From IMG/VR virus record IMGVR_UViG_3300043219_000566, positions 1 through 64,000 of that record: a stretch of DNA of 64,000 nt; one strand, 5' to 3'. A program made the position numbers and the translations under genes. This document shows positions 5,942 through 44,349 of the stretch, in pieces (position 1 is the stretch's first letter; every line of letters begins with the position of its first letter). The notes under the pieces were generated by a model that saw only the letters and a program-made list of their open reading frames with translations, did no database searches and was not told where the DNA came from.

Positions 5942-6499
5942 TCACGCCTGCTCGGCGATGCACTTCACCTGCGGAAGCTCAGCCCCGCTAGCTGGTTTAC
6001 ATAAAACCTTTCGGGCTTTAGGCTTGCGGGCTTTCCCTCGCTTCTTTGGGTTACGGGCATCACGCACCTCTTGAGGTACATCGGCAGTTACGCCGAGAGA
6101 ATCGAGGACTTTTGCGACCAGCGGCCCCAGCGCGGACAGTATCTTGGCCTGCCCGGATAATTCGAGCAGGGGATAATCAAGCTGGTTGTCCATGATGATA
6201 TGCCGCCTCTCGCGTCGCCCGGTAGCGACGTCCAACTCATACTTCACCTGATAGACAATGCGCTGGCCATCGCGAGACCCGTAATGCGCCTCGAAACGAA
6301 CTCGGGCATCTTGCTCAGTCTCGCCGTCGCGCCGGACAGTGATACCGTGCACGGATTCCAAGTGCTCGAACAGCGCCTCTTCGGTCTCGAACAACCCATG
6401 ACCGGAGACACCTCTGACCCCTTTGGTAGCAATGCAGTATTTGCATGCGATCATTCGTAACCTCCCCTGACACGTTAATGCACCAAACCTATTTCTCAA
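5942..6499 (-). CDS. hypothetical protein with N-terminal CxxC...HxxxxH zinc finger
   Basis: CKYC...EHLESVHG. Confidence 0.5.
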   Translation of the reverse strand: MRNRFGALTCQGRLRMIACKYCIATKGVRGVSGHGLFETEEALFEHLESVHGITVRRDGETEQDARVRFEAHYGSRDGQRIVYQVKYELDVATGRRERRHIIMDNQLDYPLLELSGQAKILSALGPLVAKVLDSLGVTADVPQEVRDARNPKKRGKARKPKARKVLCKPASGAELPQVKCIAEQA

Positions 6500-7401
6500 C
6501 GCCGCGCCGCCTGACGGTTCTCCTTGTACAGCTTACGCATGCGCTTGCGCAACCAGCTCTCCTGGTGATACGCATAGCGTCCCCAGTGCCGATGCAGCTT
6601 CTTCATGTCCTCGTAGTGGCGTCCGTCGATATCGGGCCAGATGTCGTGCCAGACATAGTCGAACTTGTACCGCCCGTTGGGCTTCCACACGTGAGCATCA
6701 GCATGAACCACGATCAGCTTGTCACCGTAGCGCGCCCGGTAGTGCCCAGCGACCAGCTTGATCACGTCGGCTTCTTTCTCGATCACCCAGACCTTCGTGA
6801 CCCGAGGATTATCGAGCGCAGCCTGCACCGCGACACCCAGGCCCAAGCCAGTAATGCACACAGTGCCGCTAACTTGGCCCAACCACCTGTGCTCGTGGAT
6901 CTCGGCAGGAGTGTCCGACATGATCACGTCGCTGCCTTCGCGACCTATTCGCGTATAACGCCCAGGAAAGATGAGCCGACCTTCGCGACGACCACGCACT
7001 GTGTTCTCCAGCGCAGCCGCGCTCTCGCTGACCTCAAAGCGCTCGACCACCCAACCACCGTGCTCGCCCTCTGGCACATCCACGCACCGCAGAAGACCAG
7101 GTCTCCAGCACTCCCACGAAGGATGCACCGTGCCTTGCCGCCCGCTCCGCTGCCCGTAGTAACGCCCGTGACTAGACCAGACCTCGACGTACCCGGGAAC
7201 AGAAAACGACTTCACGCGGCAACAGCGCGTATCGGCAATCACGCCGACGTTGATCGTATGGCCGACCACAAACCGGCTCCAGCCATCATTGACTTCGTCG
7301 TAAAACGCGTCACGCGCCGCGTGCGGGCGCATGATCATGCCGCCAGTACGCACGTACTTACCGTACTGGTCCTCCTTGATCTGAGTTTGAGCCATGATCA
7401 C
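6496..7401 (-). CDS. class I SAM-dependent methyltransferase (spermidine-synthase-like fold) with N-terminal extension
   Basis: VCITGLGLG (motif I), VWVIEKEADVI (motif II), VVHADA, FDYVWHDIWP. Confidence 0.75.
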   Translation of the reverse strand: MIMAQTQIKEDQYGKYVRTGGMIMRPHAARDAFYDEVNDGWSRFVVGHTINVGVIADTRCCRVKSFSVPGYVEVWSSHGRYYGQRSGRQGTVHPSWECWRPGLLRCVDVPEGEHGGWVVERFEVSESAAALENTVRGRREGRLIFPGRYTRIGREGSDVIMSDTPAEIHEHRWLGQVSGTVCITGLGLGVAVQAALDNPRVTKVWVIEKEADVIKLVAGHYRARYGDKLIVVHADAHVWKPNGRYKFDYVWHDIWPDIDGRHYEDMKKLHRHWGRYAYHQESWLRKRMRKLYKENRQAARR

Positions 7402-8942: not shown

Positions 8943-10462
8943 AACGCGCTTTTCCGAATCGGGTGTCTACAACCGGACGGCGCGCTCAACATGGGCGAGT
9001 GACTGAAGCAGAACGGCGCGCTAGTATTCGGCGGGTAACTGGGCACTCACGGCACGCTATCGTATGTTGGGTAACTAGGGTTCGGCGGCGCGCTTGTGCA
9101 AGTCGGGTGGCTACGTCCGGCCGACACGCTGACGTACAACGGATGACTGGCATCGCGAGGCGCGCTGCTGATCAATGGGGGGCTATCTCGGTATGGCACG
9201 CTAACCCGCTTCGGGTGTGACTTGCCGCGATCGGCGCGCTTCAACCATCTGGGTGACTGTTGCTATTCGGCGCGCTCTGACCCCACGAGTAACTCACACA
9301 CTCCGACACGCTCAGCTCATTCGGGTGACTGGCCGGATACGGCGCGCTGACGTTCACCGGATAACTAACATAAGGCGACACGCTTAGCTTGAGCGGGTGA
9401 CTAATCGGGGCTGGCGCGCTACGCCCGGAAGGTTAACTTTCTTGTCGCGGCACGCTGGGGACAAGCGGATGACTCGTTCTCACCGGCGCGCTAACTTGTC
9501 TAGGGTAACTGGGTCCGATCGGCACGCTAGCGTACAACGGTTGGCTCAGCCGATTCGGCCCGCTCATGCAGCTCGGAGGGCTAACCTGTAGCGGCGCGCT
9601 CTGGTGAACAGGGTGACTAATACTGGACGGCGCGCTTGGGCGACTCGGGAGACTAGATCCAAAACGGCACACTCATTCTCGTCGGGCAACTCCGGGTAAT
9701 CCGGCGCGCTTTCGAGCTAAGGGTAACTACACGAGTACGGCACGCGAATGTAACGCGGGTAACTGCTCCGCTGCGGCACGCTGCGGCACTGTGGGTAGCT
9801 TGATCGGCCTGGCACGCTTGGGCGACTCGGGCGACTGAAGTTGAGCGACACGCTGCGCCAGTACGGATGACTATATTCGTATGGCGCGCTGTTCACTGAC
9901 AGAGAGCTAAAACTGGTCAGCACGCTGCGCCAGTACGGATGTCTTGACACGTTCGGCACGCTGTTCCATCGCGGGTTACTATCCGTTGCAGGCGCGCTCT
10001 GCCTCCTAGGGTGACTGCCGCATGATGGCACGCTCCAACTACGCGGAGGACTACGTTGAAACGGCGCGCTATTGTGGTCTGGATAACTTCCACTATACGG
10101 CACGCTCCCACGACACGGGTAACTGTCCCACTCCGGCACGCTACCGCGTATAGGGTGACTTTCATCGACCGGCACGCTCAGTTTGCACGGATGTCTAATC
10201 TGCGCTAGCACGCTCCTGTTCCCCGGATGACTGGATACGTCCGGCACGCTTCTTCGCTTCGAGTTACTGTCAGCCGCAGGCACGCTACGTATTTCCGGGT
10301 AGCTAGTTTCGCACGGCACGCTCGTTCTTGCTGGATAACTCTCCTGTTCTGGCACGCTCCTGCGTCCAGGGTAACTTAGTCTGCGCGGCGCGCTCTGTTT
10401 CCGCGGATGACTGTTTCGCGACGGCGCGCTAAAACACTTCGGGTAACTGCCGTTCAGCGGCA
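8943..10462 (-). ncRNA. TIGR-like array, downstream half (about 42 units of 36 nt)
   Basis: Plus strand GG(C/A)(A/G)CGCT + 10 nt + GG(G/A)T(A/G)ACT + 10 nt, with a 36-nt period (9015, 9051, 9087 ... 10387, 10423). Minus strand reads AGYGYGCC(R)-N9-AGYYAYCC(R)-N9. Orientation is inferred from the co-oriented Nop-domain gene. Confidence 0.85.
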
Positions 10463-10474
10463 ACACACACACAA

Positions 10475-10501
10475 GGAGCCTGCGCGAATCGCGCAGGCTC
10501 C
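10475..10501 (-). terminator. 12-bp hairpin after the tasA stop (terminator or processing stem)
   Basis: GGAGCCTGCGCG-AAT-CGCGCAGGCTCC, followed on the minus strand by TTGTGTGTGTG rather than a U-tract. Confidence 0.5.
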
Positions 10502-10519
10502 CTGCATGGGCAGACAAAT

Positions 10520-11644
10520 CTACGCAGCCGCGCTGTCGCCGTGCTGCAGCTTGCGGTCCTGGTACGACGGGAAGACCGGCAGGCCTTCCAGCTTACGCCA
10601 CTGGCAGTAGAGATCCTTCAGGAACATCTTGACCATGTAACGCACCGACATCTGGTACCGACGGGCCGCACTGGTGATGTAGTGCAGCTTCCCGTCCTTA
10701 CCCTCTGCCTGCTTGCCATCGTTGTGCGTCCCGTACTGCTCGTGGTTGTTCATACGGTGCCGGTAATTGTAGTAGACCCGCGCGTACGAATCCTCCGGGC
10801 TGACCAGCACTTGCTTGCGCGGCCGCTTCCGGCGGTTCTTCTCGTCCTCGCGGCCCCAGAGCGTCGCGCCACAGACCGTCCACGTTCCTTCGACCTTGCG
10901 CTCCAGACAGCTCTTGATCCTCCGGACAACCTCGGGGGCCTCCTCGTACGTCCGCTCGTCGCAGTAATCCCACTTGCCCACCTTCAGCAAGTTGGGACCG
11001 AGCACGCCCATGAGCTTCGTCTTCAGCCACGGGTTGTACGTGACGCTGAGCCGCGTCACCTTATTGCCCGCATGGTTGGTGTACTCCCGATCAACCAGAT
11101 GCTCCTTGCGCTTGGAGCGCCCGCGGTGGTCTCCGGCGACATCGAGCCCAGCGTACTTCCACAGGCTAGACGCATACCTGGCCTTGCGGATGTCGAACTC
11201 GCTGATGATCACCGCTGCCGCAACTTCCCCGATCCCGTCGATCGAGTTCAGCCACGGCCAGATGGAGCACTCGCTCAACAGCGCAGGCAGCGATTTGACC
11301 AGCTCCTTCTCGGCCGCAAGCAAGCTGTCGAGTACCCCGAGCAGCGCCTTCTCCGCCCCGGTGGCGATCAGGCCCTCGCCCTCTTCGAGCGGAAGTTCGC
11401 TCGCCGCCGCATCCGAAAGCCGCTTGCAGCTCTCGCGGAGCGCCGCAAGGTACTCCAAGCTCTGCTTGCTCAGCTCCTTCTCGGCCTTGCCGGGTTCTTG
11501 CCCCAGCTTGAACTTGATCTCCCCCACCAGCCGGTTGCTGCACGCGATCCGCAAACGTTGCGCATCGTCGCGACCCCGGACCGCCAGGCGAACTGCTCGC
11601 CGGAAGAGATCGAAAGGGTCAATGTCTCTTACAGATGCTACCAT
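10520..11644 (-). CDS. tasA: TasA-like Nop-domain protein (IS110/Nop5-related, no recognisable RuvC or HNH domain), 374 aa
   Basis: Start MVASVRD at ATG 11644 after AGGAG. Coiled coil RDDAQRLRIACSNRL; Nop/IS110 C-terminal motif IWPWLNSIDGIGEVAAAVIISEFDIRKARYASSLWKYAGL...YNPWLKTKLMGVLG...RYMVKMFLKDLYCQWRKLEG. Flanked on both sides by 36-nt dual-repeat arrays. Confidence 0.8.
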   Translation of the reverse strand: MVASVRDIDPFDLFRRAVRLAVRGRDDAQRLRIACSNRLVGEIKFKLGQEPGKAEKELSKQSLEYLAALRESCKRLSDAAASELPLEEGEGLIATGAEKALLGVLDSLLAAEKELVKSLPALLSECSIWPWLNSIDGIGEVAAAVIISEFDIRKARYASSLWKYAGLDVAGDHRGRSKRKEHLVDREYTNHAGNKVTRLSVTYNPWLKTKLMGVLGPNLLKVGKWDYCDERTYEEAPEVVRRIKSCLERKVEGTWTVCGATLWGREDEKNRRKRPRKQVLVSPEDSYARVYYNYRHRMNNHEQYGTHNDGKQAEGKDGKLHYITSAARRYQMSVRYMVKMFLKDLYCQWRKLEGLPVFPSYQDRKLQHGDSAAA

Positions 11645-11690
11645 GGTACTTCTCCTGTGTGTGTGAATGAAACAATGTCTTCTTTCAAAG

Positions 11691-14300
11691 AAGACGCTTT
11701 TCTCAGTCGAGCAACTAGTGCTCGTCGGCACGCTTTGTTTTTCCGGATGTCTGGCCCTCGGCAGCGCGCTCCTTTTGCACGGATAACTACCTTCACTCGG
11801 CACGCTGTAGTCATCTGGATGTCTCGGCTCCGGCGGCGCGCTTAGTTACTCTGGGGGTCTAAGACCTAACGACACGCTAATTGCTGCTGGGAGACTTGTT
11901 CGTGACGGCGCGCTAGTCCCTTCTGGGTAGCTGTTTCGTGACGGCGCTCTATTAGTCCGTGGGTGGCTGCGTCTTCTCGGATCGCTAGGAGCGCGCGGAT
12001 GACTATCACGATACGGCGCGCTGAATCCCTACGGATGACTACCCGATCAAGGCGCGCTAGACGTCCACGAGTAGCTGTCACAAAGCGGCACGCTGCTGCT
12101 ACACGGATAACTAAATGCGGCAGGCGCGCTGTTCAAACATGGGTGGCTAGGGCGTGTTGGCGCGCTCAGGGCCTCTGGATTACTAAACGTTTCCGGCACG
12201 CTGTACGTCAACGGAAGACTCGTGTGATGCGGCACGCTGGGGCAATGCGGATGACTAACCAGGGCTGGCTCGCTCTCTTGTCATGGAGATCTAGGATGGA
12301 ACGGCACGCTCTGTCTTTCCGGGTGACTACCGCCGATTGGCGCGCTACTTCATCCTGGGTGACTGGACTACGTCGGCACGCTGCACGTTCGTGGGCAACT
12401 GGTGGATTGCGGCGCGCTCCGACTCACTGGGTAACTATCACCTGGTGGCGCGCTGGGGCAATCTGGGTGACTCGCACGATACGGCGGGTACGCGGCACGC
12501 TGAACTCGGCCGGGTGACTCATCAGGGACGGCACGCTCTTTTGTCGTGGGGATCTAGGCTGGAACGGCGCGCTCGGCCTTTCCGGGTGGCTGCGGTCGCG
12601 TGGCACGCTAAATCTAGGCGGGTATCTGGCCAAAAATGGCGCGCTTATGCAGCCCGGGTGGCTGACATTGCTCGGCACGCTGTACCTCAACGGAGATCTT
12701 TGTGAACGTGGCACGCTTATACGACACGGATGACTCTGGGTATGCGGCACGCTGAACTTGAGCGGGTGTCTCGCCCCGGTTGGCACGCTCCATCGTCCAG
12801 GGTGACTGGCGCGACATGGCACGCTGCACTTCTGCGGTTGTCTCCAGTCGCTTGGCGCGCTAGTCTTCTGCGGGCAACTTTAGTCGCACGACACGCTAGT
12901 CCCGCCTGGGTAACTCCGCCTTTTTGGCACGCTGGAGGAAGCTGGATGTCTACCTCGCCGCGGCACGCTAATTCCGAACGGGCGACTTATGACGCGCGGC
13001 ACGCTCCGCCCCGGCGGTTGACTGCGACTCCTTCGGCACGCTCAAGCGGTACGGGTTGCTGAGCGAACTAGGCGCGCTTTCGCGGAACGGGTGACTGTGA
13101 CTGTACGACACGCTCCGCTCGCTTGGATAGCTCCTTCTGTGCGGCGCGCTACGGTTGTTCGGGTGACTGCCACGATACGGCGCGCAAAGGCCCCTCGGGT
13201 GGCTGGCCAAAGACGGCGCGCTGGGACGGCTCGGGTGACTTAGTGGAGCTGGCGCGCTTATTGTGCGCGGAAGACTAACGCGACATGGCGCGCTCGTACG
13301 GTACGGGTGGCTATTTCGGAGCGGCACGCTAGGGTGACAAAGGAGACTTTGCTCACTCGGCGCGCTCATTCGATACGGGTGACTGAGCAAGCTAGGCGCG
13401 CTCTAAACAAGCGGTTGTCTCGTCCTGCTCGGCGCGCTGTAACCTGTCCGGGTGACTACCGCTTGTCGGCGCGCTCACTGCTTCTGGGTAACTGCCGTTT
13501 CTCGGCACGCTGAGTAGACGCGGGTAACTACCGCCTGCAGGCGCGCTATCGCTGACCGGATGACTCGGATGGAACGGCGCGCTGTGCACGTTTGGGCAAC
13601 TATTTCCGCATGGCACGCTGCACAAGCTCGGGTAGCTCGCATCATGCGGCACGCTGGTTCCTGACGGGTAGCTTGCAAGCTCAGGCGCGCTGCGCTCGCA
13701 CGGGTGACTTCTCCGCTGTGGCACGCTTTTGTCGTACGGATGACTTCTATCCTCCGGCGCGCTGATATTCTGCGGGTAGCTAACGGATGACGGCGCGCCT
13801 TCGCCGACTGGGTAACTAACGTGATACGGCACGCTGACTTCTGCTGGGCAACTTTCGACATACGGCACGCTCGACCAGCGCGGGTGTCTTGTAGCGCGTG
13901 GCGCGCTTTCTTCCCGCAGATGACTGTGCTGGTACGGCGCGCTATCTCCTTCAGGGGTGGCTAGAGCGATGCGGCACGCTATTACGGAACGGGTAACTCG
14001 GCCTAATTGGCGCACTGGACCGACACGGGTAGCTCGTGGCACGCGGTACGCTTATGTCCTACGGGTGTCTGGCATCTCACGACACGCTGTTCTTGCAAGG
14101 ATGACTTCCGCCAGACGGCGCGCTAAGTTGTCCCGAGTGGCTTCTATTGGACGGCGCGCTCGGCTGGCTCGGGTGACTGACAATGGACAGCACGCTAACT
14201 TCGTCGGGGTGACTGAGTTTCCACGGCGCGCTAATTGTGCCCGGATGACTAGCGTTGGACGGCACGCTGTAATCCAACGGGTAACTCCACTACTACGGCG
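11691..14300 (-). ncRNA. TIGR-like array, upstream half (about 72 units of 36 nt plus one truncated unit)
   Basis: Same alternating GGCRCGCT / GGRTRACT 8-mers with 10-nt variable gaps from 11691 to 14297; a few 37-nt units and a partial unit at 12483-12493. Confidence 0.85.
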
Positions 14301-15162
14301 TCGATCGAATCCGGTTGAGCATCTCCGACAAGTCGACTAGCCCAACCGCGCCATCACCGTCGGAATCGTACTCATCGTTCATCTCGCCGTAAACCGACAG
14401 CAACCCCGCAAGATCCGCCAGCGTAGCCGGAGCGCTCTCAATGATGATGATCGAACAACCGCGCCGCCCGGCAAGCAAGTTCCACCCACCATACTGTTCG
14501 TCGTAGATGGCGCTGTGTGAGTACATGTTGAACGAGAGCGGAATCTCGATCGTAGAGTTCGGCGCTATAGCAAGCGCCTCGAAGTGAAGCGTGTCGATCA
14601 ATAGGCCAGCCGGAGTTGCCTCTGGGAACGGACCCATACTGGCCCAGGCCTGGTAATCAGCAGTTCCATCCTCGTTGGTGTTGTTGATGCCGCCCAGCCC
14701 GCTGTCCGGCGGAAACCCCTGGAACATCCATTGACCACCGGACGTAGGATCAGGCGGCCAAGCCCCACCCTCGCCAACCAGCCGCAGCTCAGTCGGGTCC
14801 CACTGCAACAAGCAGTCGAGCAGGCAAAACGGTTCGTTCTGCCCAACCGCGAAGATGTGCACGTCGACGATGTCGCCTACGTGCCTCGTCTCGGCAGTGC
14901 AGCGTAGTTCAAGATCGACCGGAAGGTTGGCATTGGCCGGAACATCGTAGGCGAACACCGCGGTTGCAAAGGGCTCGTCGGTGCCCCACTCGTTGTCGTC
15001 CACCGCGTACAGCTCAACATAGACAGTGTCGCCTATTTCCGCGGCAGGAGTTTCAGTCCGCAGATCCAAATCAATAACCCGCCAGTCTTGAGCTTGCGCG
15101 CAGCAAACCGCCGCAACAGCTAGCACTGATGCAACCAGCGCCATTTTCCAAATCCGGGACAT
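14293..15162 (-). CDS. secreted protein with cohesin-like domain(s) and C-terminal dockerin/EF-hand-like motif
   Basis: Signal peptide ending AAVCCAQA; HVGDIVDVHIFAV...LQWDPTELRLVG; C-terminal LADLAGLLSVYG...YDSDGDGAVGLVDLSEML. Confidence 0.6.
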   Translation of the reverse strand: MSRIWKMALVASVLAVAAVCCAQAQDWRVIDLDLRTETPAAEIGDTVYVELYAVDDNEWGTDEPFATAVFAYDVPANANLPVDLELRCTAETRHVGDIVDVHIFAVGQNEPFCLLDCLLQWDPTELRLVGEGGAWPPDPTSGGQWMFQGFPPDSGLGGINNTNEDGTADYQAWASMGPFPEATPAGLLIDTLHFEALAIAPNSTIEIPLSFNMYSHSAIYDEQYGGWNLLAGRRGCSIIIIESAPATLADLAGLLSVYGEMNDEYDSDGDGAVGLVDLSEMLNRIRSTP

Positions 15163-15207
15163 GGCAAAATCTCCTTGTTTGACTAGAACAGCTACACGTT
15201 GGTCAGC

Positions 15208-15432
15208 TCACGCTAACACCGTCATCAGTTTATCGGACTGCAGCTTAGCGACCCGCTTTTCGTCGTCAAGAATCTCACGCCTGATGCGACGGATATTACG
15301 GCGCGCCCGAGCCAAGTTATCTTGCGCCCGGCGCAACTGCTCCTTCAGCTCCGATTGGCTGCCCAGATAATGCGCCGGGAGCCACGTTCCCTCCCGGTGC
15401 AGCAGCTGGACGCTCACCGCCGCAGCCTTCAT
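15208..15432 (-). CDS. small coiled-coil protein
   Basis: LKEQLRRAQDNLARARRNIRRIRREILDDEKRV. Confidence 0.4.
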   Translation of the reverse strand: MKAAAVSVQLLHREGTWLPAHYLGSQSELKEQLRRAQDNLARARRNIRRIRREILDDEKRVAKLQSDKLMTVLA

Positions 15433-16168
15433 CAGATCTCTCCTTCCCCCCAGCCGTTTCAAAAGACATAAGCTCGAAGTTGCACGCACCGACGAAGAAA
15501 TCTCCTTCGCTCGCGTACTCGACATCGAGCACCACCCAGAACTTCGTTACGTCGTTCTTGGGGTCGGTATCGGTGCAATTGCCCCAGACCTGCAGGCTGC
15601 AGCCCTTCGCGTTGCAAGCCCCGCCGCCGCCGACGCAGAACGTGCGTAGAACGTCGGCTTGCAGATACTTCAGCACCCCGGCATCCGGCCCCAACGACAT
15701 GCAATGCGGCGGATAGTGCGTGTCCTCGACCGACATCCACAGCATGCCCGACATGACGTAGGTTCCCTGCTCGACCTTGATCGGAGAGCAGTCCATCCCG
15801 TACGAGAAACAACCGTCCTGGCCGCCGTTGAACTCGCAATCTCCGCAATCACCAACGCAGTCCGAGTCGTACTCGAAGTGGTAATCTACGCGCGGGTAAC
15901 CAGGGTACAGACCGATCTTGGCGTGCACTTCGGTAAGCACGCCCAGCGACACGCCCTGCTCGTGATCGTACAGAGGCACGTCGAAGTCCACGTACGTATA
16001 GACCACGCCGTCCTTGTTGAACTTGCTCAACGGAACAACGAACTCAGCGTAAGCGTCGCCGTTAATCACGAAAAACCGAAAAGCCCGCGCAGGATCGTCC
16101 AACGTCGGGCCGTCTGCCGCAGCGGAACACACTAGCAGCAGCGCGCAAAGTAGACTGACAAGATTCAT
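15317..16168 (-). CDS. secreted Cys-rich protein
   Basis: Signal peptide MNLVSLLCALLLVCSAAA; many Cys and acidic residues. Confidence 0.55.
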   Translation of the reverse strand: MNLVSLLCALLLVCSAAADGPTLDDPARAFRFFVINGDAYAEFVVPLSKFNKDGVVYTYVDFDVPLYDHEQGVSLGVLTEVHAKIGLYPGYPRVDYHFEYDSDCVGDCGDCEFNGGQDGCFSYGMDCSPIKVEQGTYVMSGMLWMSVEDTHYPPHCMSLGPDAGVLKYLQADVLRTFCVGGGGACNAKGCSLQVWGNCTDTDPKNDVTKFWVVLDVEYASEGDFFVGACNFELMSFETAGGKERSDEGCGGERPAAAPGGNVAPGALSGQPIGAEGAVAPGAR

Positions 16169-16203
16169 TCGGACATCTCCTGTGCACGCGCCTGAAAGCG
16201 CGG

Positions 16204-17463
16204 CTAGGGCCAATACGTCGGGTGCGGGCGGTGCGCCACGCGCACCAGGTGCAACCCGTCCACGAACCGAAAATTATGCCGGTGGCCGTAGTCTACCAAC
16301 CGCCCGGATTGCACAAAAGAAATGTCGGCAAAGGTCACGCCGCGCGTGCTGCCGTCGAGCCGAATGAAGGTCCGCGCCGCCCAGGCCTCGTCGTGCAGAC
16401 AGCTAATCTGGATGTTGTTCGTCCCGCCGCCCAGCACCTCGTTGTCCCCGGAATCGCCCAACACGAACACCGCGTCGAGCCCCCCGGCGGTCTTGGCCGA
16501 AACGTAGACGTCGCGAATCCAGAGCGAGTGCGTGCGCGAGCCCAACTTGAACACGTAGCGCTCGGCCGGATCGGAGCCCGGTGGTGCAAGATCGCACGCG
16601 AAGAAACAGCTGCCGTCGATCACGCCTCCGGCGTTGCTAACCGCCTCGCTCGCCCCGGGTGTAAAGCCCCCCGCAATCGGCCCGTGCGGCGACGTGATCC
16701 GATAGTCGTTGTACGCACTGGTATAGAACGCCCCGCCCTTTTTGCCGGAAAACCGAAAGTAGCTCGCATCCGTGATTCGGTAAACTTCGCAGCCGATATT
16801 GACCACGCACGCGCCGCCGTAGGGGTTGGCGTCACCGTACCTCCCGCGGATCTTGCAGTGCCTGACGATCACGCCTCCGGAGCCCGCCATCGCAGCCGAG
16901 CGCCCCAGCAAGATTCCGCAGCCCGGTGGGGTGTAGGCCTCGTCCGGCCGAATGATCAGCCCTTCGAGCGTCGCCCAGTTGGAGCTGGCCATATCGACCA
17001 CCGGCGCGGTCGCCAGCTGCGGTGGAAACTGCACGTGCGCCAGGTAGTTGTGCTCGAAGCGCAAGTTCGTGCGCCCGGCATGGCGGAAGTCCAGCGTCTG
17101 AGGCCAGACCGTGTACGGCACGTACGGCACGTAGATGTCGCCGCCCGCGCGCTTGGCCCGGATCTGGGACTGCACGAACCAGAACTCAAGGTACATCTCG
17201 CGCAGAATCTCGTCGGGCAACAGCCCCGCGGTGGAGCGGAACTGCTCGGCCCGCGCCCGCGCTTCCGGCGTCGTCGGCGACAGCCCCTCCTTCTCCAACT
17301 GCTCCAAGAACTCCTGGATAGCCTTGTCGGGCGCGGGCGCTTGCTCATGCGGAAGCGGTACCGCGACACGCGCGGGTGCCTGTGGCTTTGTCTGAGGCGC
17401 GGCCTTCGGCTGCGCGCAAGCCACCACAGCCAACAGCGGCAACAACAACCAAGCTCTGATCAT
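16204..17463 (-). CDS. secreted protein or lipoprotein, possible beta-helix (pectin-lyase-like) repeats
   Basis: MIRAWLLLPLLAVVACAQ signal; beta-repeat-like segments such as VIVRHCKIRG, LWIRDVYV, IQISCL, VTFADISF. Confidence 0.45.
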   Translation of the reverse strand: MIRAWLLLPLLAVVACAQPKAAPQTKPQAPARVAVPLPHEQAPAPDKAIQEFLEQLEKEGLSPTTPEARARAEQFRSTAGLLPDEILREMYLEFWFVQSQIRAKRAGGDIYVPYVPYTVWPQTLDFRHAGRTNLRFEHNYLAHVQFPPQLATAPVVDMASSNWATLEGLIIRPDEAYTPPGCGILLGRSAAMAGSGGVIVRHCKIRGRYGDANPYGGACVVNIGCEVYRITDASYFRFSGKKGGAFYTSAYNDYRITSPHGPIAGGFTPGASEAVSNAGGVIDGSCFFACDLAPPGSDPAERYVFKLGSRTHSLWIRDVYVSAKTAGGLDAVFVLGDSGDNEVLGGGTNNIQISCLHDEAWAARTFIRLDGSTRGVTFADISFVQSGRLVDYGHRHNFRFVDGLHLVRVAHRPHPTYWP

Positions 17464-17620
17464 CAGCTTTCTCCTTTTTGTCTTTCGCAACAACAGAAAC
17501 GCTCCGGCGGTGAGAAACGACCGCATTTCCCACACATGGTCCAATGCCCAGTAAATTTTCGATCGATCCAGCGCAGCCAGCGCCGCCACCACGAATTGCC
17601 AAGAATGATCTGCGGGTTGC

Positions 17621-40569: not shown

Positions 40570-40768
40570 CGGTGTCTTCCGAACTATCCAGATTCGGACG
40601 CTCAGCCTCGTTGGCTGCGTCTCTGATCTTCTGCTCCGCGTCGCGGGCAGCCTGTTCCTCGCGCCTGCGGCGATCTGCCGTAGCCGCTTGTTGATCTTTC
40701 TTCTGAGAGCGCCAGATGCCAAGTGCTTCCAGCACTGCTCGAAGTATGAAACTAAGCCACTTCATCAC
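40526..40768 (-). CDS. i-spanin (Rz)-like protein
   Basis: N-terminal hydrophobic helix followed by the charged coiled coil RRRREEQAARDAEQKIRDAANEAE. Confidence 0.45.
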   Translation of the reverse strand: MMKWLSFILRAVLEALGIWRSQKKDQQAATADRRRREEQAARDAEQKIRDAANEAERPNLDSSEDTDDPMGVEHWNRKRR

Positions 40769-43700
40769 GCCGTCCTCGGCAAGTACGGTTCCGGCACGCC
40801 CATCTTCTCTAACTTGGCACGCAGCTCGGCTGCGGCCTCGGGCTCCTTCTTCGGATCAGGCTTCTCGTCCCAGCGCAGGAACAGCTCCTTGTCGACGTCG
40901 ATGGCGTAGCCACCGTTAGCAAACTTGCTGTCGTCAACGAGATCGTAGAGCCCGTTACACACGCCCTTCGGCGGCAGTGGGATACGAGCCAGATTGCTCA
41001 TGCACCAATCGATGAGGCAGTTCGTCCGCATCATCAAATCGATAGAGCCCACGGCTACCTCGAAGATCAAAGCGTCATGCACACCCAGAGCAATACGGAA
41101 GTCGAGCGAGTAATTGCGCTGCACGCGATACTGCTCGCGCGCATCACGGCAATTATACACCGCCTTGTTCAAACATTCCGCTACCGTGCTCTGAATCGGA
41201 AAATTGCAAGCCTCTCGCTCCTGCTGTGACATCACGGACGAGTCGTCTACCGTGTGGAACCGCCGATAACGCCAGCACGGGTTGATCAAATAGCCCGGAG
41301 AATGAACTGCCTGGCGACACAGATCCAAGAACCGCGACACCTCGACAAACTCGCTGTGGAAACTGTTGATCATCGCCTGGCAATCGTCGGTCGTAACCTC
41401 GACGCCCTCCTGCTTTAGCTCGCGGGCAATCGCCCCGGCCGAACGGCCGTAAGGGATGCCGAAATTGACGGTTTTGGCCGCCACGCGCTTGTCCTTACCG
41501 ATGCTCTCGACGTAGCCCTTGGGCGGGCCGTGCATAACGGCGCAGTACGGCAGCTTGAAACCGCTGATCGCGCGCTCGGCGTGCAGGTCTCGCTTCCAGG
41601 GAATCATCTTCACGGTGGTGTCCACCGCAGTAGAGAACACGTGCCATTGCCCAGCACGATCCTTGTACTCCCCGTAACGCGTACCGGACGGGATCTCGTC
41701 GCCCTCCCTGACGGCGATATCACGCACCCAATCCGGGTGCAGCCAGCGGTACGGCTCGCCTAGCGCGTCAACCAGCACCGGGTAAGGCGGACGCTCTGTC
41801 AGCACGTTCCAGAATTGCAGGTCCCCGGACAGCAGAGCCAACACGATCAGCTCAGCTTGGCAGTAGTCGGCTTCGACCAGCACATAGCCGGGCTGCGCCA
41901 TAAAAATAGAACGGATCTTGGGCGGAGCCTGCTCCCACTTGGCGAACATAGCGTGCAGCTCAGGCTCGCGGCGTTTGGGCAAGTTCTGAAGATTGGGCTT
42001 TCGGGAAGCCCAGCGACCGGTCTCCAGTATCTGCAGAATATGAGTGCGCACCCGCCCGTCAGGGTCGACGTGCTGCATCAATCCGCCCTCGGTAATCTCG
42101 TGTGTATCCGGGTCGATTACCGGCAAGCTAGTGAAGTTCTTGCAGACCTGATCCACGAAACGCAGTTTACGCAGCTGGTTGGCCACCGGGTCCTCGGGAG
42201 ACAAAATCCCCAAGGTTTCCTTGTCGGTGCTGGGCGCACACTCCAGCTGACGTCTATCGCGCAGCACCCGATCCCAGTCGATCGGTGGCTTATCGGTGCT
42301 TTTGATCGGAGTCAACCCGCAGCAGTAGGCCCCCGCGGGCCGAAGGCGGATCGGCACGAGCGGCGTATCCCGCTTCTTGCCATTGAACGCCTCGCCGAAC
42401 AGTAGCTCGCGCACGTGCTGGATCGAGCGAAAATTGAAAGCTGGCCATTCGATCTGCTTGCGCAAGTAATCGAGCAACTCCGTTTTCTTGCGATCGTAAG
42501 TAATCGCCAGCTCGGTGATCCGATCCCGGTCTGCCAGCAGACCGGTTTCCTCGATCTCCAAAATGCCCACGCACGAACGCATCTCTTCGGACAGTAGCTC
42601 AGCCAGCTTCGCGCGATCCTCGTGGCACATATTGTCCTGCTCAGCGTACCGCTCATCGAGCCGCTCGTCGCAGCGCCAGGTCACGTCGGCATCGAACAGG
42701 GCGTAGAGATACAACACGTGCTCCGGGATCAATCCGAAGCCCTTGGCAGCTGGCACCGCGAGTTCGTCGAGCCATCCCTGCAGCTCGGTTTCGTACCGAT
42801 CCACGTCGGTGTACTTGAGCATCAGCGAGGACAGATCCTGCTTGGCACTCTCGTACAACAGGTGGTGCTTCAGCATGGTGTCGAAGCCGTCGGCGTACTT
42901 GTCGATAAAGTCGATGCCCAGCGATTTCACCCACGGATAATCAGCCCGCAAATTGTGTCCGCCGATCCGCGTGCCAGGATGCAGCAGTAGCCGCGCCAGC
43001 TCTTTGCTGACTTCCGCCATCTCCGCGTCGGTGAAATTGGGCACCAGAGCGTTGAGCACCTCGACGCCCATCTCCGGGACTTTGTTGCCAGCCGCATCAG
43101 TCCACACGTAACCCAAGGCAGGCTGTCCGTCGTCGTCTACGTACTCCATGTCGTACGCCAGCGCCTGCGAAACAGTGGGCTTGGGGAAGCTAATGAGATT
43201 GGGATGCCCGTTCACGGAAGCGTAATGCCGCGGAAAAGGTACCCGCGCGTGGCGGTGGAAAGGAATCAACACCGCGTGCCCGGATTTGTACGACAACTGC
43301 AACGTCAACAGCTTGCCGTCGGCCCACGGGCTACGACCAGACCACTCGCAGTCCAACGCGAGCTTGTTCTCGCTCTCCTGCAACCGCTGGTCTACGTACT
43401 CACGTACCTGATGAACCGAGCGCAGTACACAAGCATTGTTGACCTGCCCGTCCACGTCCTGATACTCCCGCGGAATCTGTTTGCGTATCGTGCCGCAGGC
43501 AAAACTCGACGCTCGCGCCAGATCGTTGGACAGCCCGTCCCGCATATTCGGCTCACGAGCTACCGCAGCCGGGTGCATGGTCGGAAAGGTGTTGATGACG
43601 ATCTCTTCGGGCACCTGCCCGGCGATATCGCACTCTTCGGGCTCCTGCCCACTGCTGTCGCATTGACGCGGCAAATGCGTCGTCCAGAGTCTTACCGACC

Positions 43701-44349
43701 CGCGGCTCTTGGTCACCGATGAGCCCCTGCCGTGAAAATGCTTGATAGCCTCGGTGCCCAGCAGAATCACTAGCTTCGGCCGGATGATAACCAGTTCTGC
43801 CCACAGCAACCAGGCACATTCCTTGACCCAGGCCTGCTTGAACTTACCACCCGGCGGAGGCTGGAAACGGCAAATGTTGGTAAAGTAGGCATCGTCGAGA
43901 AAGTCAGCGATACCCTGCTCGATCAAGCAACGCTGCAGCTCGCGTCCGCTCTCGCCGACGAACAGATAATCTGTGTCGTACTCGGTGCGGCCAGGATGTT
44001 TGCCGACGACCACGACCTTAGCGCAGCCGGGCCGCGGGCCACGAGGAAAGGCTTGCGCGGCCGTGCCCCGATTCGCATCGCGGGCAATCGGCTTGAACCC
44101 CGTGTGCCCAGGAATGAACTTCGCCGTATAAGGCAACCCGACGCCGATCGCGTCGGGGATCGGGCGGTTGTACACGTCACATAGCAAGTTCCAGAGAAAC
44201 GCCATGAAGTCGAAACGGTTCCGAAACGAATCTTCGAGAATGCTAGCCAACGCCGGACCCAGCGGAGGACCGTACGGGCGCTGCTCCTCGACGTTGCGCA
44301 ACGCCTCGACCCACGGCGGCAACCTCGGGTCGATAATCACTTGGCACAC
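40765..44349 (-). CDS. polA: family A DNA polymerase with N-terminal uracil-DNA-glycosylase-like domain and 3'-5' exonuclease
   Basis: UDG-like VGKHPG...FVGESG...YFTNIC...MHPAAV; Exo I LDCEW, Exo II HNLRAD, Exo III YALFDA; Pol motif A EADYCQAE, motif B RVAAKTVNFGIPYG, motif C VHDAL. Confidence 0.93.
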   Translation of the reverse strand: MCQVIIDPRLPPWVEALRNVEEQRPYGPPLGPALASILEDSFRNRFDFMAFLWNLLCDVYNRPIPDAIGVGLPYTAKFIPGHTGFKPIARDANRGTAAQAFPRGPRPGCAKVVVVGKHPGRTEYDTDYLFVGESGRELQRCLIEQGIADFLDDAYFTNICRFQPPPGGKFKQAWVKECAWLLWAELVIIRPKLVILLGTEAIKHFHGRGSSVTKSRGSVRLWTTHLPRQCDSSGQEPEECDIAGQVPEEIVINTFPTMHPAAVAREPNMRDGLSNDLARASSFACGTIRKQIPREYQDVDGQVNNACVLRSVHQVREYVDQRLQESENKLALDCEWSGRSPWADGKLLTLQLSYKSGHAVLIPFHRHARVPFPRHYASVNGHPNLISFPKPTVSQALAYDMEYVDDDGQPALGYVWTDAAGNKVPEMGVEVLNALVPNFTDAEMAEVSKELARLLLHPGTRIGGHNLRADYPWVKSLGIDFIDKYADGFDTMLKHHLLYESAKQDLSSLMLKYTDVDRYETELQGWLDELAVPAAKGFGLIPEHVLYLYALFDADVTWRCDERLDERYAEQDNMCHEDRAKLAELLSEEMRSCVGILEIEETGLLADRDRITELAITYDRKKTELLDYLRKQIEWPAFNFRSIQHVRELLFGEAFNGKKRDTPLVPIRLRPAGAYCCGLTPIKSTDKPPIDWDRVLRDRRQLECAPSTDKETLGILSPEDPVANQLRKLRFVDQVCKNFTSLPVIDPDTHEITEGGLMQHVDPDGRVRTHILQILETGRWASRKPNLQNLPKRREPELHAMFAKWEQAPPKIRSIFMAQPGYVLVEADYCQAELIVLALLSGDLQFWNVLTERPPYPVLVDALGEPYRWLHPDWVRDIAVREGDEIPSGTRYGEYKDRAGQWHVFSTAVDTTVKMIPWKRDLHAERAISGFKLPYCAVMHGPPKGYVESIGKDKRVAAKTVNFGIPYGRSAGAIARELKQEGVEVTTDDCQAMINSFHSEFVEVSRFLDLCRQAVHSPGYLINPCWRYRRFHTVDDSSVMSQQEREACNFPIQSTVAECLNKAVYNCRDAREQYRVQRNYSLDFRIALGVHDALIFEVAVGSIDLMMRTNCLIDWCMSNLARIPLPPKGVCNGLYDLVDDSKFANGGYAIDVDKELFLRWDEKPDPKKEPEAAAELRAKLEKMGVPEPYLPRTA

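What the first reader, a model, noticed from the sequence alone, without database searches (positions are those of the whole stretch)
8943..14300. Very large phage TIGR-Tas-type RNA-guided locus: about 114 dual-repeat/dual-spacer 36-nt units around a Nop-domain gene
Seen: two different conserved 8-mers alternate every 18 nt (minus strand AGCGYGCC and AGTYAYCC, both AG-N4-CC and usually followed by a purine), separated by variable 9-10 nt segments. About 72 units lie upstream and about 42 downstream of a Nop/IS110-related gene, and no cas genes are present. Established: TIGR-Tas systems use 36-nt tandem interspaced guide RNAs with edge and loop repeats and two short spacers that pair with opposite DNA strands, bound by Nop-domain Tas proteins. 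Inference: this is such a system, with a large guide repertoire, in a phage.
Basis: partly seen in the sequence, partly recalled or inferred. Interest (0 to 1): 0.93.

Follow-up and report, generated by a model that had tools for sequence, protein, structure and literature searches.

The report
Giant TIGR-Tas guide array in jumbo phage
A 216-kb uncultured phage carries a known kind of RNA-guided DNA-targeting system (TIGR-Tas, nuclease-less TasA type) with about 114 guide units on both sides of its gene, roughly seven times the usual array size; the system itself is ordinary, and its targets remain unknown.

Summary

**Arrays.** On the minus strand, AG-CGYG-CCR and AG-TYAY-CCR alternate every 18 nt, with 9-nt variable spacers between them. 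There are 72 loop repeats upstream of the gene (11695-14300) and 42 downstream (8945-10461). A strict half-unit pattern matches 79 times, against 0.09 expected by chance.

**Gene.** The gene at 10520-11644 (374 aa) passes NCBIfam's TIGR-Tas model. Its AlphaFold model matches only solved TasH and TasR structures at high confidence. It has no N-terminal HNH or RuvC domain, so it is TasA-type, and it carries a clade-specific insertion of about 58 aa. It keeps the Tyr/His pair that processes pre-tigRNA in SpTasH.

**Context.** The window is the start of a 216.5-kb IMG/VR contig with a phage replication module.

**Not coding.** The arrays show no codon signature, and their reading frame is broken by 13 in-frame stops and 6 frameshifting spacers.

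**Relatives.** Related loci carry the same repeat type and also have large arrays: at least 83 (the array runs off the contig end), about 57, about 56, about 41, and about 37 units in Ralstonia phage phiRSL1. A phage whose Tas is 74% identical shares no spacer with this one.

**Targets.** None were found in the window, in the fetched relatives, or in phiRSL1's own genome.

**Verdict.** This is a new, unusually large member of a known family. Interest is moderate.

The parts
11695..14300 (-). Upstream TIGR dual-repeat array, 72 units. It begins with a degenerate, 5'-truncated edge repeat that overlaps the stop codon of the preceding ORF. It ends with a degenerate loop repeat and a 3'-truncated edge repeat (AGCG).
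   Evidence: Motif walk, (142 motifs plus terminal copies). Sequence. Pattern test.
12473..12493 (-). 21-nt discontinuity inside the upstream array, holding a broken extra edge repeat. It lies between the two copies of a diverged segmental duplication of about 2.5 units (half-units 12584-12530 and 12321-12267).
   Evidence: The duplicated blocks differ at 8 of 36 spacer positions; the 1st percentile of the null minimum is 12.
11677..11695 (-). Terminator-like hairpin (8-bp stem, T-rich tail) directly after the upstream array's truncated edge repeat.
   Evidence: folded.
10520..11644 (-). tas gene, 374 aa. TasA-type: N-terminal coiled coil plus Nop domain, no HNH or RuvC. Predicted wedge hairpin about residues 184-200, clade-specific insertion about 222-285, Tyr361/His368 processing pair. 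An AGGAGA ribosome-binding site lies upstream of the ATG at 11644.
10468..10508 (-). Strong 19-bp hairpin between the tas stop codon and the downstream array (-37.6 kcal/mol, z -5.7), running into a (UG)5 tract.
8945..10461 (-). Downstream TIGR dual-repeat array, 42 units. [quoted passage not shown]

Best explanation
This is a dual-repeat TIGR-Tas locus of the nuclease-less TasA type, carried by an uncultured jumbo phage.

**Shown**
- Two arrays, 72 and 42 units of 36 nt, flank a Tas gene and run in the same direction as it.
- Each unit reads: edge repeat AG-CGYG-CCR, 9-nt spacer A, loop repeat AG-TYAY-CCR, 9-nt spacer B.
- The protein has the Tas/Nop fold and no nuclease domain.
- The protein keeps the Tyr/His pair that cleaves pre-tigRNA in SpTasH.
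- The arrays are not coding.
- Spacers turn over completely between related phages while the repeats stay the same.

**Inferred from the published mechanism**
- The arrays are transcribed on the minus strand with the surrounding operon.
- Tas cuts the transcript in the middle of each edge repeat into about 114 different 36-nt tigRNAs.
- A Tas dimer holds one tigRNA through the AG (box D) and CCR (box C) motifs of both repeats.
- Spacer A pairs with 9 nt of one DNA strand and spacer B with the adjacent 9 nt of the other strand.
- With no nuclease, the complex binds and bends DNA. It would block transcription or replication rather than cut.

**Inferred here**
- The targets are foreign DNA (host or rival mobile elements), not the phage's own genome.
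- The arrays grew at least partly by internal duplication followed by spacer divergence.
For: **Protein**
- NCBIfam TIGR_Tas_endo scores above its cutoff.
- The AlphaFold model has pLDDT 89. Its top 11 Foldseek hits in the PDB are TasH and TasR at probability 1.0.
- The N-terminal 125 residues are all helical, and the profile match starts at residue 19, so there is no HNH or RuvC domain.
- Tyr361 and His368 align with SpTasH Y289 and H296. Those are the published catalytic residues for pre-tigRNA processing (PMC13421893). Tyr361 is at least 90% conserved among 60 homologues.

**Array anatomy**
- Position-by-position conservation matches the published layout.
- The edge gap has complementary end bases (C...G); the loop gap does not. 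This is the rule TIGRFinder uses to tell edge from loop.
- Both arrays have truncated edge repeats at their ends, and the upstream one is followed by a hairpin.

**Not coding**
- The only repeat-compatible frame has 13 in-frame stops.
- Six spacers shift the frame.
- GC at the third codon position is 0.555, against 0.84 in tas.
- JGI called no gene there on the array strand; its only call is a 43-aa ORF on the opposite strand.

**Guide-like variability**
- No spacer is shared within 1 mismatch with the array of a phage whose Tas is 74% identical. Chance predicts 2.9.

**No self-targeting**
- None of 103 guides, tried in two geometries, matches the 64-kb window with 2 mismatches or fewer. The 3-mismatch hits are at or below the level of permuted-pair controls.
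- phiRSL1's 24 cleanly parsed guides have no target in its whole 231-kb genome.

**Repression by TasA**
- This is published for MbTasA (bioRxiv 10.64898/2026.09.09.750476).

**Duplication**
- One diverged block duplication is present.
- Near-identical spacers are in excess.
Against: - No RNA data exist for this locus. Transcription, 36-nt processing and loading are inferred.
- No sigma-70-like promoter was found.
- A very strong hairpin sits between tas and the downstream array, so expression of the 42 downstream units is uncertain.
- No target was identified for any guide, so whether targets are foreign rather than self or host rests on negative evidence. That evidence covers 30% of this genome plus one relative.
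- The 58-aa insertion has no recognisable fold or family. An unrecognised catalytic role, or recruitment of a nuclease in trans, cannot be excluded.
- The published dyad histidine aligns one or two positions off in many homologues.
Confidence: 0.8

Rival explanations
1. The system is a DNA-cutting effector after all. Either the clade-specific insertion of about 58 aa (residues about 222-285, three cysteines and a basic KNRRKRPRK stretch) supplies or recruits a nuclease, or a neighbouring gene of unknown function does.
For: The insertion is shared with the 74%-identical relative and partly with one other homologue. It is modelled with moderate confidence, mostly pLDDT 57-92, as a small beta-rich module. 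All flanking ORFs lack any family assignment. The NCBIfam family name says endonuclease.
Against: There is no Pfam match even at E 10. No HNH or RuvC signature is present. The cysteines are not conserved in the third homologue that has part of the insertion. Most relatives with equally large arrays lack the insertion. The NCBIfam profile covers only the Nop part.
Confidence: 0.1
2. The guides regulate the phage's own genes, acting as a programmable temporal repressor, rather than acting on foreign DNA.
For: TasA represses transcription when aimed at a gene. The locus sits inside a long same-strand gene block of the phage.
Against: There is no match with 2 mismatches or fewer in the 64 kb available, which is 30% of the genome. 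If 10 or more guides were self-directed and evenly spread, the chance of seeing none would be under 3%. phiRSL1 guides have no target in its complete genome. Spacers turn over completely between close relatives. Spacers are less GC-rich than the genome.
Confidence: 0.05
3. The arrays are decaying relics, or a structural or recombinogenic repeat region, with no guide function.
For: The repeats show scattered point variants. There is one broken unit (12473-12493) and a degenerate terminal loop. phiRSL1's array has many indels.
Against: Box D (AG) and box C (CC) are kept in 97-100% of about 216 repeat copies, while the spacers are near background composition. Variation is concentrated at the gap positions that make no protein contacts in the solved structure. 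The register holds over 2.6 kb. The protein keeps its conserved core and processing pair.
Confidence: 0.04
4. The repeats encode a Ser-x-Pro repeat protein, or the gene is an IS110-type transposase with its bridge RNA.
For: The minus strand has ORFs of up to 266 aa with an S-[AV]-P...S-[YH]-P periodicity. Stops in that frame are fewer than mononucleotide shuffles predict: 13 against 25, P 0.006. There are weak IS110 and Transposase_20 hits and an old 'transposase' annotation.
Against: The frame has 13 stops plus 6 frameshifts. There is no third-position GC signal, and a second spacer frame is depleted in stops as well. The IS110 model scores 29 bits against a cutoff of 140 and covers only the shared RNA-binding part. 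No DEDD or Tnp domains are present.
Confidence: 0.01

Closest known systems
Dual-repeat TIGR-TasA systems (FpTasA of Flavonifractor plautii; Faure et al. 2025, PMC12045711)
   Same: A solo Nop-domain Tas protein, a 36-nt unit with edge and loop repeats and two 9-nt spacers, arrays upstream and/or downstream of tas, and truncated edge repeats at the array ends.
   Different: Box D is AG rather than UG, and box C is CCR (mostly CCG) rather than CCA. The protein has a 58-aa insertion. There are 114 units, against 'most often 5 to 15' and a catalogue mean of about 16 per dual-repeat array (65,635 tigRNAs in 4,126 arrays).
SpTasH of Salicola phage CGphi29 (PDB 9W04, 9W03)
   Same: It is the best structural and sequence match in the PDB. 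It is phage-borne, has a dual-repeat array, and the Tyr/His processing pair aligns.
   Different: SpTasH has an N-terminal HNH nuclease and cuts DNA. This protein has none. Structural-alignment identity is about 14%.
Ralstonia phage phiRSL1 ORF034 and the 1.4-kb 'empty' stretch after it (NC_010811.2)
   Same: A jumbo phage (231 kb) with a Tas homologue (33% identity) and the same repeat types (AG-YG..-CC edge, AG-WCAY-CC loop). The array of about 37 units follows a hairpin after the stop codon.
   Different: It is annotated as 'transposase' and its array is not annotated. The array lies on one side only and is more degenerate, with indels. The protein lacks the insertion.
IS110 bridge-RNA recombinases and archaeal box C/D Nop5
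   Same: A shared Nop-type RNA-binding domain and split-guide logic.
   Different: This protein has no DEDD or Tnp catalytic domains and no fibrillarin-binding domain. Family scores are far below their cutoffs, and the guide arrangement is an array rather than a single RNA.

Membership tests
TIGR-Tas | Tas protein recognised by a curated family profile | tested here: met
   NF052498 scores 103.1 bits against a cutoff of 100, E 2e-29, covering residues 19-350.
TIGR-Tas | Nop-domain fold with a coiled-coil dimerisation region, as in solved Tas structures | tested here: met
   The AF2 model has pLDDT 89. Its top 11 Foldseek PDB hits are TasH or TasR at probability 1.0, with target-normalised TM 0.55-0.74. 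Nop5 comes next at E 0.3.
TIGR-Tas | Array of two different short alternating repeats with spacers of about 9 nt and a 36-nt unit, next to tas and in the same direction | tested here: met
   All 79 strict matches are on the tas strand.
TIGR-Tas | Box D and box C motifs shared by edge and loop repeats | tested here: met
   AG at positions 1-2 and CC at positions 7-8 are kept in 97-100% of both repeat types; position 9 is a purine in about 90%.
TIGR-Tas | Edge repeat has an extra base pair across its 4-nt gap; the loop repeat does not | tested here: met
   The edge gap is CGYG, with C and G ends in 105 of 107 copies. The loop gap is TYAY, with non-complementary ends.
TIGR-Tas | [quoted passage not shown] | tested here: met
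   Both arrays have truncated edge repeats at both ends. The upstream array is followed by a hairpin with a T-rich tail. The downstream array is followed only by a T-rich stretch.
TIGR-Tas | Precursor processed into 36-nt tigRNAs bound by Tas | not testable with these tools
   Indirect evidence only: Tyr361 and His368 align with the SpTasH Y289/H296 processing residues.
TIGR-Tas | Tandem-spacer recognition of an 18-bp DNA target | not testable with these tools
   No natural target was found in the sequence available.
TasH / TasR (nuclease-bearing Tas) | N-terminal HNH or RuvC domain | tested here: not met
   The profile match starts at residue 19. The N-terminal 125 residues are helical only. 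There are no Pfam nuclease hits.
TasA | Nop domain alone, with no accessory nuclease domain | tested here: met
   As for the TasH/TasR row. The 58-aa insertion has no family match, and its fold could not be determined when modelled alone (pLDDT 46).
IS110 RNA-guided transposase | Full-length match to the family, including the DEDD and Tnp catalytic domains | tested here: not met
   NF033542 scores 29.2 bits against a cutoff of 140, over residues 15-179 only.
CRISPR-Cas | One repeat of 25-36 nt, spacers of similar size, and cas genes | tested here: not met
   The locus has two 9-nt repeats and 9-nt spacers. No Cas family turned up among the scanned ORFs.

The most novel reading that the evidence does not exclude
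In this jumbo-phage clade, guide libraries may be built largely inside the array, by duplicating units or half-units and then mutating the spacers, rather than by capturing pieces of targets.

The traces that fit this reading:
- A diverged 2.5-unit duplication in the window.
- Exact or near-exact spacers paired with unrelated partner spacers.
- Spacer 'families' of 4-6 members in the closest relative.
- A purine preference at spacer position 5.
- Spacers that are less GC-rich than their genomes.

If true, this would answer the open question of how TIGR arrays arise and expand. It would also mean that these 100-guide arrays are pre-diversified libraries aimed at families of related sites.
Probability: 0.15. 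Interest if true: 0.8.

Novelty: new member of a known kind. Interest (0 to 1): 0.5.

Why it matters
**Open questions in the field.** The natural targets of TIGR-Tas systems and the way their arrays grow are stated open questions (PMC12045711).

**What this locus offers:**
- A locus with 114 guides gives far more chances to find real targets than the usual 5-15 guides.
- A close relative with a fully different guide set makes it possible to study spacer turnover.
- The distant cultured relative phiRSL1 gives a laboratory route to testing function.

**Annotation.** The finding flags that 'transposase' annotations in jumbo phages can hide TIGR-Tas loci.

**Tool use.** A compact, self-processing, nuclease-free Tas with a naturally multiplexed array is a candidate scaffold for multi-site repression.

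Tried and rejected
- **Rfam.** Nothing was found in the locus at E up to 1 or in the whole window at gathering scores.
- **Tandem Repeats Finder.** It missed the arrays almost entirely because the spacers differ. A motif walk was needed.
- **Promoter scan.** No sigma-70-like site was found.
- **Self-target search in the window.** None of 103 guides matched with 2 mismatches or fewer. Both half-site orders (rc(A)+B and B+rc(A)) were tried on both strands. The eight 3-mismatch hits were at or below permuted-pair controls.
- **Cross-target search.** Window guides against 11 related loci, and L012 guides against the window and their own contig, gave only single 2-mismatch hits, as chance predicts.
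- **phiRSL1 self-target search.** 24 cleanly parsed guides against the complete 231-kb genome, read in five pieces: one 2-mismatch hit, equal to the control.
- **Collection-wide target scans.** Not attempted. An 18-mer is expected to match about 17 times by chance in 596 Gb, and only one pattern can be scanned per call.
- **The insertion alone.** Pfam found nothing at E 10. The single-sequence AlphaFold model was unusable (pLDDT 46), so no fold search was run on it.
- **Clustering of repeat variants along the array.** None was found, so there is no sign of CRISPR-like polar growth.
- **Similarity or complementarity of spacers A and B within a unit.** None was found.
- **Supplementary tables of Faure et al.** They were searched for this contig and for phiRSL1. 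Nothing was found, but Table S1 is stored truncated, so this says nothing.
- **Coding hypothesis.** Rejected.
Full report
**1. The observation**

Read on the minus strand, the region 8945-14300 consists of two short conserved elements that alternate every 18 nt, with a gene in the middle.
- Loose + strand patterns for the two elements occur 99 and 80 times in the 64-kb window. Of these, 98 and 78 lie in this region.
- A strict half-unit pattern, AGCGYGCC-N10-AG-N4-CC, matches 79 times. All matches are on the minus strand and inside the two blocks. Dinucleotide-preserving shuffles give 0.09.
- Walking from motif to motif gives 83 motifs in 8961-10448. It gives 42 + 100 motifs in 11727-14286, split by one 21-nt break at 12473-12493.
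- The step between motifs is 18 nt in 79 of 82 cases in the downstream array. It is 18 nt in 96 of 99 cases in the larger upstream block and in every case in the smaller one. The remaining steps are 19-20 nt.
- Counting loop repeats, including one degenerate terminal copy at 11709, gives 72 units upstream of the gene and 42 downstream.
- Tandem Repeats Finder sees almost none of this, because the spacers differ.

**2. Anatomy of the unit**

Position-by-position counts give this layout on the minus strand:
- A-G, then a 4-nt gap, then C-C, then a purine (G about 68%, A about 23%), then nine positions close to background composition.
- In one repeat the gap is CGYG. In the other it is mostly TYAY.

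This is the published dual-repeat TIGR layout. Each repeat starts with a 2-nt box D, has a 4-nt gap, ends with a 3-nt box C and is followed by a 9-nt spacer, and the box motifs are the same in both repeats (PMC12045711).
- Here box D is AG rather than UG, and box C is CCR rather than CCA.
- The CGYG gap has complementary end bases, which marks the edge repeat. TYAY does not, which marks the loop repeat. This is the rule TIGRFinder uses.
- The upstream array is followed at once by a hairpin with a T-rich tail (11695-11677), as the original description says is typical.
- The first, degenerate edge repeat of the upstream array overlaps the last codons of the preceding minus-strand ORF (14293-15162). 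No sigma-70-like promoter is present. Co-transcription with the surrounding minus-strand gene block is therefore likely. This is an inference.

**3. The gene**

The gene at 10520-11644 (minus strand, 374 aa) has an AGGAGA site before its ATG.

Family and fold:
- It passes NCBIfam NF052498, the TIGR-Tas model, with 103.1 bits against a cutoff of 100 and E 2e-29.
- The IS110 model scores only 29 bits against a cutoff of 140.
- Pfam sees just the shared Transposase_20 segment. PHROGs calls it 'transposase'.
- The best sequence match among solved structures is TasH.
- An AlphaFold model built on 60 homologues has mean pLDDT 89.
- Its top 11 Foldseek matches in the PDB are all TasH or TasR chains at probability 1.0. 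Archaeal Nop5 follows at E 0.3.

Domain layout:
- The profile match begins at residue 19, and the first 125 residues are helical only. There is no N-terminal HNH or RuvC domain, so this is TasA-type architecture.
- Compared with the roughly 300-aa homologues, it has an insertion of about 58 residues after 'LKVGKW' (about 222-285).
- The insertion is shared with a 74%-identical relative and partly with one other homologue.
- The insertion has no Pfam match. Modelling it alone failed.

Processing residues:
- The C-terminal Tyr361 and His368 align with SpTasH Y289 and H296.
- Those are the published metal-independent catalytic residues for pre-tigRNA processing (PMC13421893).
- The pair is described as typical of dual-repeat systems.

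Start codon:
- The JGI gene call starts 30 codons later. The aligned N-termini of homologues support the longer form.

**4. The arrays are not coding**

The only frame that the repeats leave open reads S-[AV]-P-xxx-S-[YH]-P-xxx.
- It contains 13 stops in 636 spacer codons, and 6 spacers of 10-11 nt shift the frame.
- GC at the three codon positions of the spacers is flat (0.53, 0.54, 0.56). In tas it is 0.62, 0.42 and 0.84.
- Stops are fewer than mononucleotide shuffles predict (13 against 25). A second spacer frame is depleted too, so this looks like composition, not selection.
- JGI called no gene there on the array strand; its only call in the arrays is a 43-aa ORF on the opposite strand.

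**5. Carrier**

- The window equals the first 64 kb of IMGVR_UViG_3300043219_000566, which is 216,501 bp.
- Nearly all long ORFs are on the minus strand, and there are no tRNA genes.
- Positions 37-55 kb hold a replication and recombination module. It has a family-A DNA polymerase fused to a UDG-like domain, a primase, a DnaB-like helicase, a second helicase, SbcC with an SbcD-like phosphoesterase, and a UvsX-like recombinase.
- The polymerase is only 24% identical to the nearest cultured phages.
- 'Jumbo phage, host unknown' is well supported. No structural genes lie in the window.

**6. Relatives**

- Ten IMG/VR loci encode relatives of the Tas protein, one of them this phage's own contig. 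All have same-strand AG-N4-CC arrays, mostly of 5-23 units.
- A Logan contig encodes a 74%-identical Tas. It has the same repeats and arrays on both sides, about 25 + 32 units.
- Ralstonia jumbo phage phiRSL1 encodes a 33%-identical protein, ORF034, annotated 'transposase'. An unannotated array of about 37 units follows it.
- Scanning IMG/VR for the repeat pattern found four more contigs with Tas homologues of 35-47% identity. Their arrays have at least 83 units (running off the contig end), about 57, about 41 and about 20 units.

Very large arrays are therefore a trait of this clade. The literature gives 'most often 5 to 15' units. It also gives 65,635 tigRNAs in 4,126 dual-repeat arrays, a mean of about 16. 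The published maximum could not be read, because it is only in a figure. At 114 units, this locus is the largest seen here, but it is not alone.

**7. Spacers**

- The window's 218 spacers and the close relative's 109 share none within 1 mismatch. Chance predicts 2.9. Turnover is complete while the repeats stay the same.
- Composite 18-mers were built in both possible half-site orders. None matched the window outside the arrays with 2 mismatches or fewer. The 3-mismatch hits numbered 8, against 4-17 in controls that pair spacers from different units.
- No cross-targets were found among the related loci.
- phiRSL1's 24 cleanly parsed guides have no target anywhere in its own genome.
- Self-regulation is therefore unlikely as the main role. 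Foreign DNA is the inferred target, but none was identified.
- 18-mers are too short for meaningful single-pattern scans of the large collections.

**8. Traces of array history**

- One block of 4-5 half-units (12584-12530) is a diverged copy of another (12321-12267). They differ at 8 of 36 spacer positions, and the 1st percentile of the null minimum is 12. The 21-nt break lies between the two copies.
- Spacer pairs at Hamming distance 0, 1 and 2 number 2, 8 and 63, against 0.1, 3.9 and 42 expected. The excess is much stronger in the close relative, with 14 pairs at distance 1 or less against 0.7 expected.
- Some of these are whole-unit duplicates. Others are identical spacers with unrelated partners.
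- Repeat variants are scattered at random, so there is no sign of polar, CRISPR-like growth.
- Spacer position 5 is a purine in 73-80% of cases, here and in two relatives.
- Spacers are less GC-rich than the carrier genome in 5 of 6 loci.

These points are unexplained. They motivate the 'in-array diversification' reading, which I rate at 0.15.

**9. Mechanism and verdict**

The best explanation is a functional dual-repeat TIGR-TasA system.
- The arrays are transcribed and cut by the protein's Tyr/His pair into about 114 tigRNAs.
- Each tigRNA is held by a Tas dimer and directs binding to an 18-bp site through split pairing to both strands.
- The result is binding or repression rather than cleavage, as shown for another TasA.
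- The sequence-level features are shown here. RNA processing, DNA binding and the nature of the targets are inferred.

The strong hairpin between tas and the downstream array (-37.6 kcal/mol, z -5.7) leaves expression of the 42 downstream units open.

The finding is real and correctly interpreted. It belongs to a family described in 2025 and since catalogued at scale, so it is a new and unusually large member of a known kind. Its value lies in target discovery and in studying how such arrays grow.

Noticed in passing
window 10468-10508 (-): A 19-bp perfect hairpin (-37.6 kcal/mol, z -5.7) lies between the tas stop codon and the first unit of the downstream array. It may terminate, attenuate or stabilise the transcript. 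phiRSL1 also has a hairpin at this place.
   Followed up: partly
window 11651-11660 and 10462-10474 (-); L012 about 1613-1622 and about 2786-2795: A (CA)5 tract sits just before the tas ribosome-binding site and a (TG)5-6 tract sits just after the gene. Both are conserved in the 74%-identical relative. The two tracts are complementary, but the TG tract is partly used by the hairpin.
   Followed up: partly
window 12473-12493 and 12267-12584: A 21-nt break in the array register, with a broken extra edge repeat, lies between the two copies of a diverged duplication of about 2.5 units.
   Followed up: yes
both arrays; L012 647-3940: Spacer 'families': identical or 1-mismatch 9-mers recur with unrelated partner spacers. 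In the window these are TACTGGCGC x2, AGTCGCCCA x2 and TTCCAKCCK x3. In L012, GAAGYGCYT occurs 4 times and AGCGGTNNA 6 times. No family is shared between the two phages.
   Followed up: partly
spacer position 5 in all units; also L012 and phiRSL1 (L011): The fifth spacer base after box C is a purine in 73-80% of spacers of both kinds. In nuclease-bearing Tas proteins this position marks the cleavage site (the 'C - 5 rule').
   Followed up: partly
arrays against the rest of each locus: Spacers are less GC-rich than the genome that carries them: 0.54 against 0.595 here, and 0.44 against 0.58 in phiRSL1. This holds in 5 of 6 loci.
   Followed up: partly
window 14293-17592 (-): Three consecutive ORFs of 289, 298 and 462 aa lie just upstream of the array, with no Pfam or PHROG match. 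Their N-termini look like signal peptides by eye. The 289-aa protein ends in a DSDGDG calcium-binding or dockerin-like motif, and its stop codon lies inside the first spacer of the array.
   Followed up: no
window 40765-44349 (-): A 1194-aa family-A DNA polymerase has an N-terminal uracil-DNA-glycosylase-like domain and a 3'-5' exonuclease domain. It is only 24% identical to the nearest cultured phage polymerases (T5-like).
   Followed up: partly
NC_010811.2 13180-15600 (L011, L014): phiRSL1 ORF034, annotated 'transposase', is a Tas homologue. The 1.4-kb stretch after it, which has no annotated gene, is a TIGR array of about 37 units that the GenBank record does not annotate.
   Followed up: yes
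window 10520-11644 (-): The public (JGI) gene call for tas starts 30 codons downstream (344 aa). Homologue N-termini and the ribosome-binding site support the 374-aa form.
   Followed up: yes
window 6496-7401 (-): A 301-aa ORF four genes downstream of the array matches a phage methyltransferase family (phrog_15480, E 1e-36).
   Followed up: no
both arrays, S-x-P frame: In-frame stop codons in the spacers are about half of what mononucleotide shuffles predict (13 against 25, P 0.006), although there is no codon-position signal. The likely cause is dinucleotide composition, but this was not resolved.
   Followed up: partly
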